A DNA stretch of 64,000 bases from assembly GCA_053919585.1 (NCBI GenBank), contig CM132810.1. One strand, given 5' to 3'. The translations under genes were made by a program, and so were the position numbers. Shown here piece after piece: positions 1 through 22,760 of this stretch. Positions within the stretch are counted from its first letter, which is position 1; each line of letters opens with the position of its first letter. This DNA comes from Euprymna scolopes (lineage: Eukaryota). The notes beneath the pieces were generated by a model. That model did not search any database, was not told the DNA's origin, and saw only the letters and a program-made list of their open reading frames with translations.

Positions 1-80
1 CGATCCTGGCTTAAAGTAGTTGCCTGTCTAACTGCACTGATGAGCTGTGAAATAGGGAAACAATACTGTATGTAGATGAC
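1..80 (+). mobile_element. 3' part of tRNA/hammerhead (retrozyme-like) repeat, cut by the window edge
   Basis: Reverse complement of 12421-12500: CTGCA-CTGATGA-GCTG TGAAA TAGG-GAAA-CAATACTG-TA-TGTAG, followed by ATGAC and a TA-rich tract. Confidence 0.8.
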
Positions 81-6760: not shown

Positions 6761-7023
6761 TATCAAAAAATTTTTTATTATGATCGAAAAATCCAAATCA
6801 GCAAGAGTAATGACTTATATTTTAAATTAAAGACTATACATTTATGTTGTTTTTCTGTATATGTTTTAAAACATATGCAAACAAACAAAAATAATTTCAC
6901 AGCATCCCAGGAAATGTCATGTAGGTACAGCTAGTATATCCCGGTTTAAGGAAGTTGCTTGTGTTTAAACACACTAAAGAATTGTGAAACAACAAAATAG
7001 TCTACCTCAGGATAATTAAATAT

Positions 7024-7286
7024 CCTTCCCTTATTGAGTTAAGCTTTTGGTAAGCGAAATCGCCAGCTGCCATTAGAATATAATGCAATAATCTTTGTGT
7101 AAACAAATGAAGCTTTCAGCATTCGACAATATTTATCATTGTAATTTCGTTTCCTCTCAGCAGCAGTCAAATGATGCTTATGTTGGTAGAAGCACCAACT
7201 GTTTCACATTCAGATGTTCAGGTTTTGATCACAGCTTGTTAACTGCACTGAAAGGCTGTGATATGACGAAACAGTCTGTGATGACT
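7024..7286 (+). mobile_element. Old degenerate copy of the tRNA/hammerhead repeat
   Basis: Shares CCATTAG.ATATAA...CTTTGTGTAAACAAAT with the reverse complement of 12600-12660. Ends CTGCA CTGAAAG...GAAACAGTCTGTG ATGACT plus (TA)n. Confidence 0.65.
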
Positions 7287-7321
7287 AATATATATATATA
7301 TAAAGAGAGAGAGAGAGAGTT

Positions 7322-9760: not shown

Positions 9761-10562
9761 ATGATCATTAAAAAAAATTCTGAAACATAGCAACCGACAC
9801 AGTTTCACCCATTTTTAAAGTAATCTTCCTTCATCTCGAATGTACTTTTTCTTGTCCTTCTTCTCAGAATTTATCAATCCTCTACTTGTGATAAGTGTTT
9901 TCTTGTGAATTTGAAGAGATTCATAGAATTGCATGACAATTCAAAAAGGGAGATGAGGGGTGGTTCTATGCAGTTTTACAATTTATTAAGAAGGAATTAA
10001 CTTTTATCTCATATTCACCTGGATAAAATGTTCTTTTCATATTCATAAGATATACATTTTGATCATATACAACTAAAAACTATCTGCCTAAATGCAAGTA
10101 AAATTACTTTCACAAAAACTAGTTTTGCACCGCTTTTATGCCCTCTTACAACGATTAAAATCAAGCTATATTTCCAAATTTGGTCAAATTATTTTTTAAA
10201 TAATCGATTTATAGTAAATAAAAATTAGAAGTCATGCAAAGACGAGAAACATTCACATAGATATAATCACACAATGTTATTAATATATATCTAGTATCAC
10301 CTTGAAAAAGTTAAAATAATTGATGCTGTTTACAGTTGTAAATGTTTCATAATATTTTGTATTTGCTTTTGACTTGAATATATTCAATTGTTATGTTATA
10401 AAAATTATTCTGAATTAAATATTTGCATAAATACATGTAAATATTTACAAATTATTAATTTTTCATGTGATTTGCTATTGTTTTATTTTTAATTTTTGCT
10501 ATATTGTATCGATTTTGTCAGTTATCTTGTTTGTTGCTAATATTGATATTTTTGCTTGTCAG

Positions 10563-12150: not shown

Positions 12151-12356
12151 CTGTGGTTCATCTTTCTAAAATTCATCAGTGTGGTAATACGTTTAGCTAT
12201 GCTGGGATTAAAAATTCAAACAGCCCGTTATATCCAAGTGTGATTAGCAACCAAGTAAGTTGTCCACTGCAGCAATAAACTCATAAATTTATAGAGTTAC
12301 TAGCATTTCAGCCCAGCTTTGCTCGGGCCCTATGTACTGTTCATAACTTTATGTGC

Positions 12357-12419
<63 letters not shown>

Positions 12420-12426
12420 TAGTCAT

Positions 12427-12470
12427 CCACATACAGTACTGTTTCGCTGTTTCGCAGCTTATCAGTGCAG
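12427..12470 (-). ncRNA. Type I hammerhead ribozyme with core mutation (CUGAUAA)
   Basis: Minus strand reads CUGCA CUGAUAA GCUG CGAAA CAGC GAAA CAGUACUG UA^UGUGG. Stem II is perfect; the G8>A change probably impairs cleavage. Confidence 0.72.
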
Positions 12471-12731
12471 CTAGACAGGCAACTACCTCAAGCCAGGATT
12501 GAAACCTGACCGCCTGTACAACAGTCAAGGCTCCTAACAATTATGCTAATCGGCAGCTGCTGTGCGAGTCGTGAATTAACGATGTTTTGACATCGTCCGA
12601 AATACCTCAATAAGCTCAATTTGTTTACACAAAGAGCATCGCTTTATATGCTAATGGTAATTCATGTATCACTTCTCAATATGCTCAACTCAAGATAAGG
12701 AGCCACATACAGTACTGTTTCACATCCACAT

Positions 12732-12775
12732 CCACATACAGTACTGTTTCGCTCTTTCACAGCTCATCAGTGCGG
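12732..12775 (-). ncRNA. Type I hammerhead ribozyme with intact core
   Basis: Minus strand reads CCGCA CUGAUGA GCUG UGAAA GAGC GAAA CAGUACUG UA^UGUGG. Stems I, II and III pair and the core nucleotides are canonical. Confidence 0.8.
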
Positions 12776-14310
12776 CTAGACAGGCAACTACCTCAAGCCA
12801 GGATTGAAACCCGACCACCGGTATATAAAAGTTTGACTCATGTCCAGGTAACCTACATCTAAAATTTCAAGTGCTTAGACCCAAAATTGGCGGAGGATTT
12901 TCGTAGAGTCTGCAAAGGTCAACTCTTTCAACTTTGACATCTTGGCAGCTAATTTTCGCCCAAAAAACTAATTAAAAAGCTTGCTGCATGTCTGAATACC
13001 CTTCATGTAAAATTTCAAATGTTTAGACCTAAATATTGCTGAATAGTTTGCTAGAGACAGCAAAGGTCAAATCTTTTGAACTTTGATTAAAAAGCTTGCC
13101 TTACGTCTGAATACACTTTATGTAAAATTTCAAATGTTTAGATCAAAAATTGGCTGAGAAATCAATTTTTTTAAAACGTTGACCCCAATTTCGACTCCTT
13201 AACATTTATTGTTTTGGGCTCAAATCAAATTAAAAAGTTTGATCCATGTCCAAGGAATCTACATCTAAAATTTCAAGTGTTTAGACCCAAAATTGGCAAA
13301 GGAGTTTGGTAGAGTTTTCAAAGGTCAAATCGTTGAATTTTGACCTCTTAACAACTAAATTTCTGGCCACAACCCAATTAAAAAGGTTTTCCCAAATCTC
13401 AATACCCCTTATGTCAAATCTAGAGTCCGTAGACAGAAAATTGACAGAGTAACTTGATAGAGAAATGTACACATCCAGGCCGACACACAGACAATTTCGC
13501 TTTTATAGATATACTAGCATGGGTTCCCGGCGTTGCCCGGGTATTTGGAGGTGTATGTTGAGCAAAAAAAAAAAGAAAAAAAAAGCAATCAGTTTTTTTA
13601 ACTTTAACCCCTATTATGACCCTGCAAAATTTATTGTTTTGAGCTTAAATCGAGTTATTAAATTAGATCCATGTCCAAGGAACCTATATCTAAAATTTAA
13701 AGTATTTAGACACAAAATTGTCGGAAGTGTTTGTAGAGTTCTCAAAGGTCAAATCGTTGAACTTTGACCCTTTAACAGGCAAATTTCTGGCCGAAAACCG
13801 ATCACATCGATTTTCCCAAATCTCAGTACCCTGTATATAAAAATTTCGAGTCTGTAGACTTAAAATTGAAAGAATTATTGCGTAGGGAAATGTATGCAGA
13901 CAGACACACACACAGACACACAGACAGATTCACTTTTATAGATATACTAGCATGGGTGCCCGGCATTGCCGAGGTGTTTGGAGGTGTATGCTGAGCAAAA
14001 AAAAAAAACGGTCAATTTTTGAAAATTTGACCCCTATTATGACGCCTTAAAATTTATTGTTTTAGGCTCAAATCCAGTTATTAAGTTAGATCCATGTCCA
14101 AGGAACCTATATCTAAAATTTCTAGTGTTTAGACCCAAAATTGTCGGAGGAGTTTGGTAGAGTTCTCAAAGTTCAAATTATCGAACTTTGACCCCTAAAT
14201 AGCTAAATTTCTGTCTGAAAACCGATCACATAGATCTTCCCAAATCTCAGTACCCTGTATATCAAATTTCGAGTAGACTAAAAATTGACAGAGTTATTGC
14301 GTAGGGAAAT

Positions 14311-20780: not shown

Positions 20781-21850
20781 TTAATTTATGCAAAGCCAAC
20801 CAGGTAACTTGTTTTGCCTGCCAAAAGCTTTCTTCAGGTTCACAAAGGCAAAATACAGGGTTTTTTTTTCATACAAAAATATGCTTTGCATTTGTTTGGT
20901 ACTTTGCCCAAGTATAAAACCAAATTGCATTTGATATATACTTACATTACTTCTTATTTGCTGCTCAGTTATTCTCTTAATTACTTTCAAGACTTGATCC
21001 ATCAATTACAAACCTACGTAATTATCTCATATATAGCATAACCACGCTGACACACTGTTTCCCATTAGATCACCAAAATCTAGCAATATTGAGCCTCATC
21101 AGTAGTAAAATGGGTGACTATTTGAAAATACCAGATGCTGTATGTGTTTTCTGCTTATCTTTGTTTTCAGTCATCGTGGATTGTTCCTTACCACTAGAAT
21201 CAAGTAGTGCCATCTTAGGAGAGGTGTGGATAAGGATTAAGCAACCCTTGCTTCACAATTACACTTGCAGCCACCGTTACAAGGGGTATCTATTTACTAA
21301 ACAGAGATCATACATGTAATTACCTCTATCGAGTGTTTCCTATAATCCTTGAAACAACTCAAAATTGTACTAAGTTCCCAGTTTTTTTGTGGGGTGGGGG
21401 ATAACATCTTTTTTGATTTAAGTCTATGATCATCTCATTGTCTGTTTCCCTAACAGCCTCCAACATTTCTCCAACATTTCTGCAACAATGCCTGAGGGCC
21501 TTGCAGCCTTACCCTTCTTCATCTTACAGCTTCTCATACTATTTCTTTCTCAATTCTTACAGTTATACCAAATACTGATTCTTACTAGCACCTATGCTTT
21601 TGCCTTTGATATACTTTTCAACTTCCTCATTGAACCATCATGTCACCTGATGCCTTGAGGAACTTTCTGTCCACCCATAACTATAGTATGTTACATCTAA
21701 AAATCTATCTCTCAGCATCTTCCACTGTTCTACTACATCTATTGTAGTGGGTCGGATAGATGAACGCTCCATCATTTGGTCTTTAAACTCACATTTCACA
21801 TGTTCTTCATTCAATCTCTACACCTTTCTCTTCATAATAAACTTTCTATT
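20780..21850 (-). mobile_element. Degenerate RTE-type LINE RT fragment interrupted by a SINE3
   Basis: ORF 20781..21005 has QMQFGFILGQST...LYFAFVNLKKAF. MKKGKAARPSG lies near 21500. Confidence 0.7.
21030..21295 (+). mobile_element. 5S rRNA-derived SINE (SINE3-like)
   Basis: The head CATAACCACGCTGACACAC..CCCATTAGATCACCAAAATCTAGCAA...AGTAGTAAAATGGGTGACT..GAAAATACCAGATGCTGTA resembles 5S rRNA. The body is shared with 22320-22588. Confidence 0.7.
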
Positions 21851-21899: not shown

Positions 21900-22760
21900 A
21901 CTTGCTGTCATATAGAATATCACATGGAAAGATTATGTGATATAGAATATTGCATGGATAGATGTATGGATATCGCATGGATAGAATAGATGTCTTATAG
22001 AATATTGCATGCATGTCTTATAGAATATCACATACATGGATTAGATGTTGTATAGATTATTACCTGGATATATAAGATGTCATAGGATATCAGATGGGTA
22101 GAGTAGATGTCATATAGAATACCACATGGATAGATTAGATATCATTAATAATATCAAATGGATAGATTAGATGTCTCATAGAATATCACATAGACAGAAT
22201 ATCTTATAGAATATTTCATACATAAATTAGATTAGGATATCACATTGATCGATTAAATGTCATATAGAATATCAGATGGATAGATTAGATGATGATGCCT
22301 CCGTTCAGTCTCGAAAGACAAAGGATACCCCTTGTAAGGGTGGCTGCATGTGTAATTGTGTGGCAAGAGTTGCAAAATCTCCAACCCAACCTCTCTTAAA
22401 TCAGCACTGCTTGAGTCCAGTGGCAAGGAAAAGTCCAGAACAACTGGAAACAATGCCGAGATAAGCAGAGAGCACATGCAGCACCTGAAAGTCACAAATA
22501 GTCACCCATCTGGTACTGGCCAGGCTCATCATTGCTTAACTTTGGTGATCTGACGGGAACCGGTGTGCCAAATGTGATGATGCTGTATATAGATTAGATA
22601 CCTTATAGAATATCACATGGATAGAAAAGATATGAATAAACTAAATATCGAATAGAATGTCACATGGAAAGAATAGATGTCTTATAGATTTGATGCCATG
22701 CATAGATTTGATGCCATATAGAAAATCACATGGATAGATTAGATGTTGTATAGAATGTAA
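21900..22760. repeat. Degenerate ~30-bp minisatellite (ATGTCATATAGAATATCACATGGATAGATTAG) interrupted by a SINE3
   Basis: The TAGAATATCACATGGATAG motif recurs throughout. Confidence 0.8.
22320..22588 (-). mobile_element. 5S rRNA-derived SINE (SINE3-like), inverted relative to the 21030 copy
   Basis: GTCACCCATCTGGTACTGGCCAGGCTCATCATTGCTTAACTTTGGTGATCTGACGGGAACCGGTG is reverse-complement 5S-like sequence. Confidence 0.75.

What the first reader, a model, noticed from the sequence alone, without database searches (positions are those of the whole stretch)
12421..12825. Tandem type I hammerhead repeat (non-LTR retrozyme-like) predicted to release a ~276-305-nt monomer
Seen on the minus strand: an intact hammerhead at 12732-12775 (predicted cut 12737/12736), a duplicated half-site GAAACAGTACTGTA^TGTGG (12708/12707), the body, and a second hammerhead (12432/12431). 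Stem I varies while keeping its pairing across copies (CCGCA/UGUGG, CUGCA/UGUGG, CUGCA/UGUAG). Stem III is the short palindrome ACAGUACUGU. Established: tandem type I hammerhead repeats in animals (Schistosoma SM-alpha, newt satellite 2, non-LTR retrozymes) yield monomeric and circular RNAs, and short palindromic stem III favours dimeric cleavage. Inference: a circRNA-producing selfish RNA family in this genome.
Basis: partly seen in the sequence, partly recalled or inferred. Interest (0 to 1): 0.8.

Follow-up and report, generated by a model that had tools for sequence, protein, structure and literature searches.

The report
Decayed hammerhead-ribozyme retroelement copy in (TA)n
This is an old, mutated 1.3-unit copy of a short non-coding jumping element that carries a self-cutting hammerhead RNA motif and sits at over 10,000 TA-microsatellite sites in this 5.9-Gb mollusc genome; the kind of element is already known, and this copy is probably dead.

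Summary
The locus is one 1.3-unit copy of a dispersed 284-nt family. Whole-genome exact counts are 7,357 family hammerheads, 10,268 3' ends running into (TA)n, and 2,464 internal unit junctions.

This copy is damaged:
- The upstream hammerhead keeps its core but has a private stem II mismatch.
- The downstream one has a private G8-to-A core change.
- The "half-site" belongs to a rearranged unit junction found nowhere else in the genome.

So the predicted 276-305-nt product is a feature of this locus only.

Every sampled copy ends at ...GTA^TGTGGATGACTATA(TA)n, 14 nt past the predicted cut. 5' ends vary, and about a quarter of insertions exceed one unit. That fits reverse transcription of a multimeric or circular RNA primed at a (TA)n nick.

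PolyA RNA-seq shows family transcripts on both strands, but no molecule ends at the cut sites and no diagnostic circle junction. Cleavage, circles and the mobilising enzyme (probably Penelope-like) remain unshown.

This is a new member of a known kind (animal non-LTR retrozymes, Sm-alpha). The scan has already reported such elements elsewhere in this genome.

The parts
12424..12823 (-). Whole insertion: 1.3 units of the 284-nt hammerhead retroelement family (partial upstream unit, aberrant junction, full downstream unit)
   Evidence: Read. 95-nt arms found. 84-93% identity to over 40 genomic copies. Aligned to typical 1.3-unit copies. The last unit differs from the family majority at 5.7% of positions. 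No ORF longer than 63 aa.
12732..12775 (-). Upstream hammerhead (HH1): core intact, stem I CCGCA/UGUGG, predicted cut 12737/12736. Stem II has a private G.G mismatch (minus-strand G at 12754).
   Evidence: At 12754, 189-280 of 215-296 reads in the more covered orientation of each run, and 87-112 of 97-118 in the other, carry the family base.
12694..12728 (-). Aberrant unit junction.
   Evidence: Alignment. The junction ACAGTACTGTATGTGGCTCCTTATC occurs once in the genome, at this locus. RNA depth collapses here. In the predicted fold of the whole transcript it pairs with the HH1 stem III.
12427..12470 (-). Downstream hammerhead (HH2): CUGAUAAG, i.e. G8-to-A at 12460. Stem I CUGCA/UGUGG, predicted cut 12432/12431. 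Probably inactive.
   Evidence: At 12460, 65-147 of 82-168 reads and 230-301 of 247-340 reads show the G8 base.
12493..12548 (-). tRNA-related segment: A-box-like TAGCATAATTG (12548-12538) and a T-arm/B-box-like hairpin UCAGG UUUCAAU CCUGG (12509-12493). A second T-arm copy lies in the upstream partial unit (~12814-12798).
   Evidence: Read. Moderately similar to the clearer tRNA-like head of another hammerhead family, z about 4.9. Not called by ARAGORN or the Rfam tRNA model.
12351..12423 (.). (TA)n tract that the 3' end (..GATGACTATA) runs into: the tail and target microsatellite
   Evidence: The same arrangement is seen in all sampled copies and at 10,268 exact sites genome-wide.
1..78 (+). 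3' end of another family copy, cut by the window edge (CUGCA/UGUAG stem I; stem II and stem III each have one broken pair), followed by an interrupted (TA)n
6940..7290 (+). Older, strongly decayed relative with the same layout, ending GATGACTAATATATA

Best explanation
The locus is an old, decayed 1.3-unit insertion of a high-copy, non-coding, 284-nt retroelement of the animal 'non-LTR retrozyme' / Sm-alpha type.

Each family unit carries a tRNA-related A/B-box-like segment. It is followed by a type I hammerhead with a 4-bp helix II and a palindromic helix III (ACAGUACUGU).

Inferred life cycle:
1. The hammerhead strand is transcribed from multi-unit copies. This may be by Pol III, since the ancestral unit has no T4 run on that strand.
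2. Two neighbouring motifs fold into a double hammerhead and cut after GUA. This gives a unit-length RNA that a tRNA ligase can circularise.
3. A reverse transcriptase, most likely from the abundant Penelope-like elements of this genome, nicks a (TA)n microsatellite.
4. It primes on the UAUA stretch 10-14 nt downstream of the cut site and copies a multimeric or circular template for a variable distance.

Shown here: family membership, copy numbers, a constant 3' end with variable 5' ends, (TA)n targets, and the defects of this copy. Inferred: cleavage, circularisation, the promoter and the mobilising enzyme.

This copy has a G8A core mutation in one hammerhead, a weakened stem II in the other and a unique rearranged junction. 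It is not expected to release a unit-length or circular RNA.
For: - **Family and numbers.** The 400-nt query gave 6,667 first-look candidates, with 84-93% identity on many chromosomes. Exact whole-genome counts, each with a reversed-pattern control of 0, are 7,357 for the 39-nt hammerhead, 10,268 for the 3' end plus (TA) tail and 2,464 for the internal junction.
- **Retroposition scars.** All 29 sampled loci end at ..TGTGGATGAC + (TA)n, and their 5' ends range from 1.0 to 2.3 units. Many are flanked by (TA)n on both sides, with TA microhomology at the 5' joint.
- **Templated junction.** The internal junction is constant (GACTATAATGC), so it is copied from the template and not made by nested insertion.
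- **Spike at one unit.** Exact-unit starts after (TA)n number 276, against 930 that continue into an upstream unit. That is a strong spike at one position.
- **Spacing.** In the first 83 loci on C1, 70 hold one, 9 two and 4 three exact motifs, mostly 284 nt apart.
- **Hammerhead.** The full core and three helices are intact in 21 of 55 sampled motifs. The predicted minimum-energy dimer of two typical motifs is the double hammerhead, at -38.6 against 2 x -14.7 kcal/mol.
- **Genome context.** The genome holds other families with canonical RF00163 hits (53-57 bits) and the same layout of tRNA-like head, hammerhead and (TA)n tail.
- **Possible mobiliser.** There are 15,395 first-look GIY-YIG candidates and intact 806-aa RT+GIY-YIG ORFs, and one of these abuts (TA)n at its 3' end. 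Penelope-like elements are published as (TA)n-biased and as the likely mobilisers of retrozymes (PMC8557442, PMC7229834, 10.64898/2026.07.22.740005).
- **Defects of this copy.**
- **Other properties.** GC is 44.5%; the sense strand lacks TTTT in 26 of 31 units, whereas AAAA is present in 30 of 31. No ORF.
Against: - No Rfam hammerhead model reaches its gathering score on this family: best 19.8-25 bits with RF00008, and RF00163 scores lower.
- Within-family covariation is not above chance: 91.9% of cells paired against 91.5% when shuffled.
- PolyA RNA-seq shows no excess of molecule ends at either cut site, and reads run through the cut into the (TA)n tail.
- The better-covered orientation would be antisense to the hammerhead if the library follows the usual dUTP convention.
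- No sequence similarity to the 33 Penelope loci examined.
- No inverted 5' partial copy, a Penelope scar, in 29 loci.
- No other abundant element shares the 3' terminus: only 118 sites have a different upstream triplet.
- The tRNA-like segment is not called by ARAGORN or the Rfam tRNA model.
- The sample of 29 loci was chosen by score against a 1.3-unit query, so it favours long copies.
Confidence: 0.8

Rival explanations
1. One reading: this locus is an active tandem retrozyme. Its two hammerheads, or the hammerhead plus the half-site, release a 276-305-nt monomer that becomes a circular RNA.
For: HH1 keeps all core nucleotides and a 5-bp stem I. In the predicted fold of the whole transcript, the HH1 stem III pairs with the half-site palindrome, which could position the HH1 core to cut at 12708/12707. 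Family RNA is present in the transcriptome.
Against: - HH2 has G8A with C3 unchanged. G8 is a catalytic residue, and this is a private mutation.
- HH1 has a private stem II mismatch.
- The junction that creates the 276-nt option occurs once in the genome.
- RNA depth over that junction is 3-14, against 100-400 on the arms.
- The copy is 5.7% from the family majority, at the old end of the sample.
Confidence: 0.06
2. An ordinary LINE-mobilised SINE. Here the hammerhead is a passenger or a 3'-end trimming motif, with no circular RNA stage. Copies longer than one unit come from read-through transcripts of tandem master copies, followed by 5' truncation.
For: The pattern of constant 3' end, simple-repeat tail and variable 5' truncation is classical target-primed reverse transcription. 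About 70% of insertions appear shorter than one unit. RNA reads run uncut through the hammerhead into the tail. No Penelope scar or Penelope sequence similarity was found.
Against: - No abundant element shares the 3' terminus, as a partner LINE normally would.
- The tRNA-like promoter module is not at the 5' end of single-unit copies, so a single unit cannot regenerate itself from an internal Pol III promoter.
- 5' ends show a strong spike at exactly one unit.
- Published retrozymes with this layout do make circles (PMC7229834).
- (TA)n bias is documented for Penelope-like elements (PMC8557442).
Confidence: 0.2
3. The head-to-tail arrangement is made by independent insertions of single units into each other's (TA)n tails, not by copying a multimeric or circular template.
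For: Every copy brings a (TA)n tail and the family targets (TA)n, so nested tail insertions must sometimes occur. L028 shows a fragment of an earlier 3' end just upstream of a unit.
Against: Internal junctions are constant (GACTATAAT-GCTCC) with no (TA)n tract of variable length between units. This holds in most sampled multi-unit copies and at 2,464 exact sites. Spacing is a sharp 284 nt. Upstream units are 5'-truncated at arbitrary points while the downstream units are complete.
Confidence: 0.04
4. The hammerhead-like motif of this family is catalytically dead or too weak to matter. It would be a fossil kept only because the copies are young.
For: It scores below Rfam thresholds. Stem I is only 5 bp, with no evident loop 1-loop 2 contacts. 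Covariation is no better than chance. There are no cleavage ends in RNA-seq. Penelope-type minimal hammerheads cleave poorly in vitro (PMC4209133).
Against: All conserved core positions and three helices are in the correct register in the family majority, and 7,357 copies are exact. A diverged relative (L011:1296-1345) keeps pairing through double changes in stem I (C-G to G-C) and stem II (C-G to U-A). The predicted dimer is the double hammerhead. Several unrelated families in this genome keep the same module.
Confidence: 0.12

Closest known systems
Animal non-LTR retrozymes (Cervera & de la Pena 2020, NAR, PMC7229834)
   Same: Non-coding units of about 300 nt with low GC (44.5%). They carry a type I hammerhead, occur head-to-tail from dimers upward, are dispersed in thousands of copies, and lack LTR, PBS, PPT and ORF. 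Mussel, another mollusc, has about 5,000 such ribozymes.
   Different: Most insertions here are single or 5'-truncated units, and only about a quarter pass one unit. There is a strict 3' end in (TA)n. Stem I is short with no evident tertiary loop contacts. Helix III is the short palindromic kind that the paper associates with amphibian, dimer-dependent ribozymes rather than with invertebrates. Circular RNA is not demonstrated here. No cephalopod is mentioned in that paper.
Schistosoma Sm-alpha (SINE-like element with Pol III boxes and a hammerhead; cited in PMC4209133 and, from my own knowledge, Ferbeyre et al. 1998)
   Same: A tRNA-related A/B-box module joined to a type I hammerhead in a short, highly repeated retroposed unit.
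   Different: The host phylum and the sequence are unrelated. The tRNA likeness here is weak (ARAGORN and Rfam tRNA negative). The other family in this genome (410-nt unit) resembles the canonical Rfam type I hammerhead model far more closely (RF00163, 53-57 bits).
Penelope-like element hammerheads and pseudo-LTR organisation (PMC4209133, PMC8557442; preprint 10.64898/2026.07.22.740005)
   Same: Hammerhead in the repeated terminal part, partial-tandem copies with variable 5' ends, a dimer-type helix III, and insertion bias for (TA)n. Abundant intact RT+GIY-YIG elements are present in the same genome.
   Different: There is no ORF. No sequence similarity to the Penelope loci examined. No inverted 5' partial copy in 29 loci. 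Helix II is 4 bp, as in canonical type I, not the 6-8 bp of the Penelope minimal hammerheads.
Newt satellite 2 and amphibian retrozyme hammerheads (Forster et al. 1988, as cited in PMC4209133)
   Same: A short palindromic helix III that is unstable in a single motif and is predicted to form an extended helix in a double hammerhead between neighbouring units.
   Different: Those are long tandem arrays in vertebrates. This is a dispersed, mostly single-unit family in a mollusc.

Membership tests
Hammerhead ribozyme, type I (Rfam RF00163, clan CL00010) | Conserved core: C3 U4 G5 A6 N7 G8 A9, G12 A13 A14, the A15.1-U16.1 pair, and H17 at the cut | tested here: met
   Met in HH1 (12770-12737) and in the family majority. 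Not met in HH2, which reads CUGAUAAG (G8A at 12460); that change is private to this copy.
Hammerhead ribozyme, type I (Rfam RF00163, clan CL00010) | Three helices around the core, with helix I open (5' and 3' ends in helix I) | tested here: met
   Helix I is 5 bp (CCGCA/UGUGG). Helix II is 4 bp in the family and 3 bp in HH1. Helix III is 3 bp in cis, or 10 bp in the predicted dimer. A type III reading is excluded because the would-be helix I hairpin is only 6-8 nt.
Hammerhead ribozyme, type I (Rfam RF00163, clan CL00010) | Score at or above Rfam's curated gathering threshold | tested here: not met
   No hammerhead hit at gathering in the window. The best clan hit is RF00008 at 19.8 bits (cut-off 48.5) on HH1 and 25 bits on a typical copy; RF00163 scores lower. 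Other families in this genome reach 53-57 bits with RF00163.
Hammerhead ribozyme, type I (Rfam RF00163, clan CL00010) | Self-cleavage 3' of H17 | not testable with these tools
   PolyA RNA-seq showed no pile-up of ends at the predicted sites. That library type is a poor test for non-polyadenylated cleavage products.
Animal non-LTR retrozyme | Type I hammerhead inside short (150-450 bp) head-to-tail repeats of low GC, without LTR, PBS, PPT or ORF | tested here: met
   284-nt unit at 44.5% GC with no ORF longer than 63 aa. There are 2,464 exact internal junctions against 10,268 3' ends, so only about 1 in 4 insertions is multi-unit.
Animal non-LTR retrozyme | Expressed as unit-length linear and circular RNA | tested here: inconclusive
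   About 2,000 family-level reads per polyA RNA run, on both strands. There are 17-21 unit-junction reads per run, but the same junction exists in genomic tandem copies. No ends at the cut sites.
tRNA-derived SINE | Pol III A and B boxes in a tRNA-derived 5' head | tested here: inconclusive
   A-box-like TAGCATAATTG and B-box-like GGTTTCAATCC are present, about 40 nt apart, and resemble another family's clearer tRNA-like head. The module lies in the 3' half of single-unit copies, and neither ARAGORN nor Rfam tRNA calls it.
tRNA-derived SINE | 3' tail shared with a partner LINE | tested here: not met
   The terminus TGTGGATGACTATATATA has a different upstream triplet at only 118 genomic sites, mostly indel variants of the family itself.
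Non-autonomous derivative of Penelope-like elements | Sequence relationship to the pseudo-LTR or hammerhead of an autonomous Penelope-like element in the same genome | tested here: not met
   No BLAST similarity between the family unit and 30 GIY-YIG loci. One abundant Penelope family was also inspected over 10-kb stretches.
Non-autonomous derivative of Penelope-like elements | Insertion scars: partial tandems, microsatellite target, inverted 5'-truncated copy | tested here: inconclusive
   Partial tandems and the (TA)n target are met. An inverted partial copy was seen in 0 of 29 loci of this family, but in 2 of 12 loci of the 410-nt family.

The most novel reading that the evidence does not exclude
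The genomic scars of this family may record how retrozymes transpose. The reverse transcriptase would prime from a nicked (TA)n microsatellite onto an internal UAUA stretch 10-14 nt downstream of the hammerhead ligation joint of a circular, or multimeric, RNA. It would then run round the template. That would explain a constant 3' end past the cut site, about a quarter of copies longer than one unit, and a sharp spike of copies of exactly one unit. If so, this would be sequence-level evidence for rolling-circle reverse transcription of ribozyme-made circles. It would also be in a lineage (probably decapodiform cephalopods) where genome papers report almost no SINEs and where I found no published description of hammerhead elements.
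Probability: 0.3. Interest if true: 0.55.

Novelty: new member of a known kind. Interest (0 to 1): 0.3.

Why it matters
The locus itself is a dead copy and matters little. The family has some value for four reasons:
- It has over 10,000 insertions in (TA)n microsatellites of a 5.9-Gb mollusc genome.
- It belongs to a set of hammerhead-bearing families that probably sit in the large "unclassified" repeat fraction reported for a decapodiform cephalopod genome. The one genome paper I checked (PMC13218726) reports almost no SINEs.
- Its constant 3' end lies beyond the ribozyme cut site, which constrains how such elements are reverse-transcribed.
- Its natural intact dimers would be convenient substrates for testing dimer-dependent hammerhead cleavage and circle formation.

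For annotation, these copies should be masked as retroelements and not read as ribozyme genes.

Tried and rejected
- **Type III hammerhead reading** suggested by the RF00008 alignment (GUC^U upstream). Rejected: helix I would be a 6-8-nt hairpin and helix III only 4 bp.
- **Thermodynamic support from single-motif folding.** z-scores were -0.7 to -1.4 for HH1 and HH2 and +1.3 for the window 1-78 copy, so none was significant. The hammerhead fold is not the monomer minimum. One sequence was given on the wrong strand and is ignored.
- **Within-family covariation.** Not above shuffled controls.
- **ARAGORN** on the window copy, 28 family loci and 5 loci of the 410-nt family. No tRNA was called anywhere, so a negative result is weakly informative.
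- **Search for the autonomous partner.** BLAST of the family against 30 GIY-YIG loci, a hammerhead regex on Penelope loci, a scan for the shared terminal motif TGTGGA..TATATA, and a relaxed Rfam scan of three 10-kb Penelope loci that was swamped by microsatellite hits. None gave a link.
- **An unbiased sample of 60 loci.** The structural statistics therefore rest on exact-pattern counts and on 29 score-selected loci.
- **First pattern search.** It had the wrong spacer length and found nothing; corrected.
- **Literature.** I found no paper on hammerhead elements in cephalopods in the searchable library.
- **Species.** Not determined.
Full report
**1. Observation**

On the minus strand of 12823-12424 the sequence reads as follows:
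- A 50-nt leader with a T-arm-like hairpin.
- A hammerhead: CCGCA CUGAUGAG CUGUGAAAGAGC GAAAC AGUACUGUA^UGUGG (12775-12732).
- A 29-nt stretch that repeats the 3' half of the motif (12721-12703).
- A 184-nt body.
- A second copy of leader plus hammerhead (12518-12424), which runs into a (TA)n tract.

The two 95-nt arms are 93% identical and 305 nt apart. The 34-nt family pattern occurs 3 times in the window and never in 100 shuffles. An old decayed relative lies at about 6940-7290 (+).

**2.

- The downstream motif reads CUGAUAAG, a G8-to-A change at 12460.
- The upstream motif has GAGC instead of CAGC, which breaks one of four stem II pairs (12754).
- Both changes are private to this copy. 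Other genomic copies, and 79-99% of RNA reads laid on the locus, carry the canonical bases.
- None of the three window motifs is fully intact, whereas 21 of 55 sampled family motifs are.
- Rfam gives no hammerhead hit at its gathering score. The best is the type III model at 19.8 bits (cut-off 48.5), or 25 bits on a typical copy. The type III reading fails structurally.

**3. The family**

- The 400-nt stretch has 6,667 first-look candidates in the 5.9-Gb assembly. The scored ones are 84-93% identical and lie on many chromosomes.
- Exact pattern counts, each with a reversed-pattern control of zero:
  - 7,357 copies of the 39-nt family hammerhead.
  - 10,268 copies of the 3' end joined to (TA)n.
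  - 2,464 internal unit junctions.
- Among the first 83 loci on contig 1, 70 have one, 9 two and 4 three exact motifs, spaced 284 nt in most cases.
- The unit is 284 nt and 44.5% GC, with no ORF.
- The last unit of the window copy differs from the family majority at 5.7% of positions. That is the old end of a 1.8-6.8% range.

**4. Insertion anatomy**

- Every one of 29 sampled loci ends at ...CAGTACTGTA^TGTGGATGACTATA followed by (TA)n. That is 14 nt beyond the predicted cut.
- 5' ends vary from 1.0 to 2.3 units. Many copies have (TA)n on both sides, and 5' joints often fall on TA dinucleotides.
- Inside multi-unit copies the junction is constant, GACTATAAT-GCTCC. So units are joined in the template, not by nested insertion.
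- Of copies that reach the unit start, 276 begin exactly there after (TA)n and 930 continue into an upstream unit. This is a strong spike at one position.
- Roughly, about 70% of insertions are 5'-truncated, about 7% are exactly one unit and about 24% are longer. These estimates rest on exact-match patterns and are crude.
- The pattern says the cDNA was not primed at the 3' end of a hammerhead-cleaved linear RNA. It was primed on the UAUA stretch of a template longer than one unit, or a circular one, paired to a nicked (TA)n target.

**5. This copy's junction**

Aligned to typical 1.3-unit copies, the window copy replaces ACTATAAT with TGGATGTGAAACAGTACTGTATGTG. The resulting junction occurs once in the whole genome, here. 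RNA depth collapses over it. The "half-site" and the 276-nt option are therefore private accidents of this locus. In the predicted fold of the whole transcript, the half-site palindrome pairs with the HH1 helix III.

**6. The ribozyme**

- The family motif has the usual metazoan type I design described in PMC4209133: helix II of 4 bp and a short palindromic helix III that is unstable in a single motif.
- For two typical motifs, the predicted minimum-energy dimer is exactly the double hammerhead. It has a 10-bp intermolecular helix III and helix I formed in trans, at -38.6 against 2 x -14.7 kcal/mol. The HH1 pair behaves the same way; HH2 does not.
- Within the family, pairing is kept in 91.9% of cells against 91.5% after shuffling.
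- One diverged relative (L011:1296-1345) keeps pairs through double changes in stems I and II. That is an anecdote, not a test.

**7. Expression**

- Three polyA RNA-seq runs of the species gave about 2,000 reads each at 85% or more likeness. Most were 85-95% alike, so they come from other copies or related families.
- Both orientations are present. One is 2-3 times commoner over the hammerhead arms, while the flanking unrelated repeat is about 1:1. Under the common dUTP convention the commoner RNA would be antisense to the ribozyme.
- No place showed an excess of molecule ends, and reads cross the cut site into the tail.
- Unit-junction reads (17-21 per run) exist but match genomic tandem junctions. 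Cleavage and circles are therefore neither shown nor excluded, and polyA libraries are the wrong material for the question.

**8. Promoter and mobiliser (inference)**

- The unit has an A-box-like and a B-box/T-arm-like element. They are moderately similar to the clear tRNA-like head of a 410-nt hammerhead family in the same genome.
- ARAGORN and the Rfam tRNA model call nothing.
- The ancestral sense strand lacks TTTT (26 of 31 units), while the antisense strand has it (30 of 31). That is compatible with Pol III.
- The genome is rich in Penelope-like elements: 15,395 GIY-YIG candidates and intact 806-aa RT+GIY-YIG ORFs, one of which abuts (TA)n.
- The literature links retrozymes and (TA)n bias to such elements (PMC8557442, PMC7229834, 10.64898/2026.07.22.740005).
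- Against this, I found no sequence link to the Penelope loci sampled and no inverted-copy scar in this family. No other abundant element shares the terminus. The mobiliser is unproven.

**9. Comparison and novelty**

The element works like, and fits the descriptive definition of, animal non-LTR retrozymes and Sm-alpha. It differs in three ways: it is mostly single or truncated units, it has a strict (TA)n-embedded 3' end, and in an invertebrate it uses the dimer-type helix III. I found no published description for cephalopods.

Earlier agents of this scan have already reported several such families elsewhere in this same genome. My results agree with them on the (TA)n targeting. They only partly support their Penelope attribution.

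**Verdict**

It is an ordinary member of a known kind, and this copy is dead.

Noticed in passing
window 22473-22590 (-) and 21029-21146 (+): Two 5S rRNA-like sequences in opposite orientation about 1.3 kb apart. One is a clear match (67 bits); the other sits exactly at the Rfam threshold (38 bits) and looks decayed.
   Followed up: no
window 12823-14000 and 12288-12327; also the 5' flanks of L010 and L012: Another repeat family (units of ~148 and ~406-433 nt, containing ..CCCGGGCAACGCCGGG..GCTAGTATAT..) flanks the retroelement. It also abuts the (TA)n next to two other family copies, so it seems to be a second (TA)n-associated repeat.
   Followed up: partly
G000:C8:10432194-10435515 (L068-L076); also L064-L067 and L077-L083: A different hammerhead family. 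It has 410-nt head-to-tail units (at least 9 here), a clear tRNA-like head directly upstream of a canonical type I hammerhead (RF00163, 53-57 bits), and ends in TTATTATATA(TA)n. L077 and L078 carry an inverted partial copy upstream, a Penelope-type scar.
   Followed up: partly
window 12611-12679: PolyA RNA-seq depth peaks here (500-700) with strong strand bias. Reads leave the stretch on both sides into one well-defined foreign sequence (agreement 0.96-0.99). An abundant transcript elsewhere evidently contains a ~70-nt fragment of the family body.
   Followed up: no
L061:4629-7046 (-), = G000:C12 near 14.496-14.499 Mb: An intact 806-aa ORF with reverse transcriptase and C-terminal GIY-YIG domains (Penelope-like), in a cluster of tandem and inverted copies. 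Its 3' untranslated region ends at a (TA)n tract and holds only a non-canonical hammerhead-like stretch.
   Followed up: partly
L028, minus strand, near position 1401: A further hammerhead-like motif of another family (CCTACA CTGATGA .. GAAAC ACTAGTGTC TGTAGG), with its own palindromic helix III and a matching 6-bp stem I.
   Followed up: no
window 12595-12610: The window copy carries a private 4-nt duplication (ATTG) in the body. About half of the laid RNA reads lack it.
   Followed up: partly
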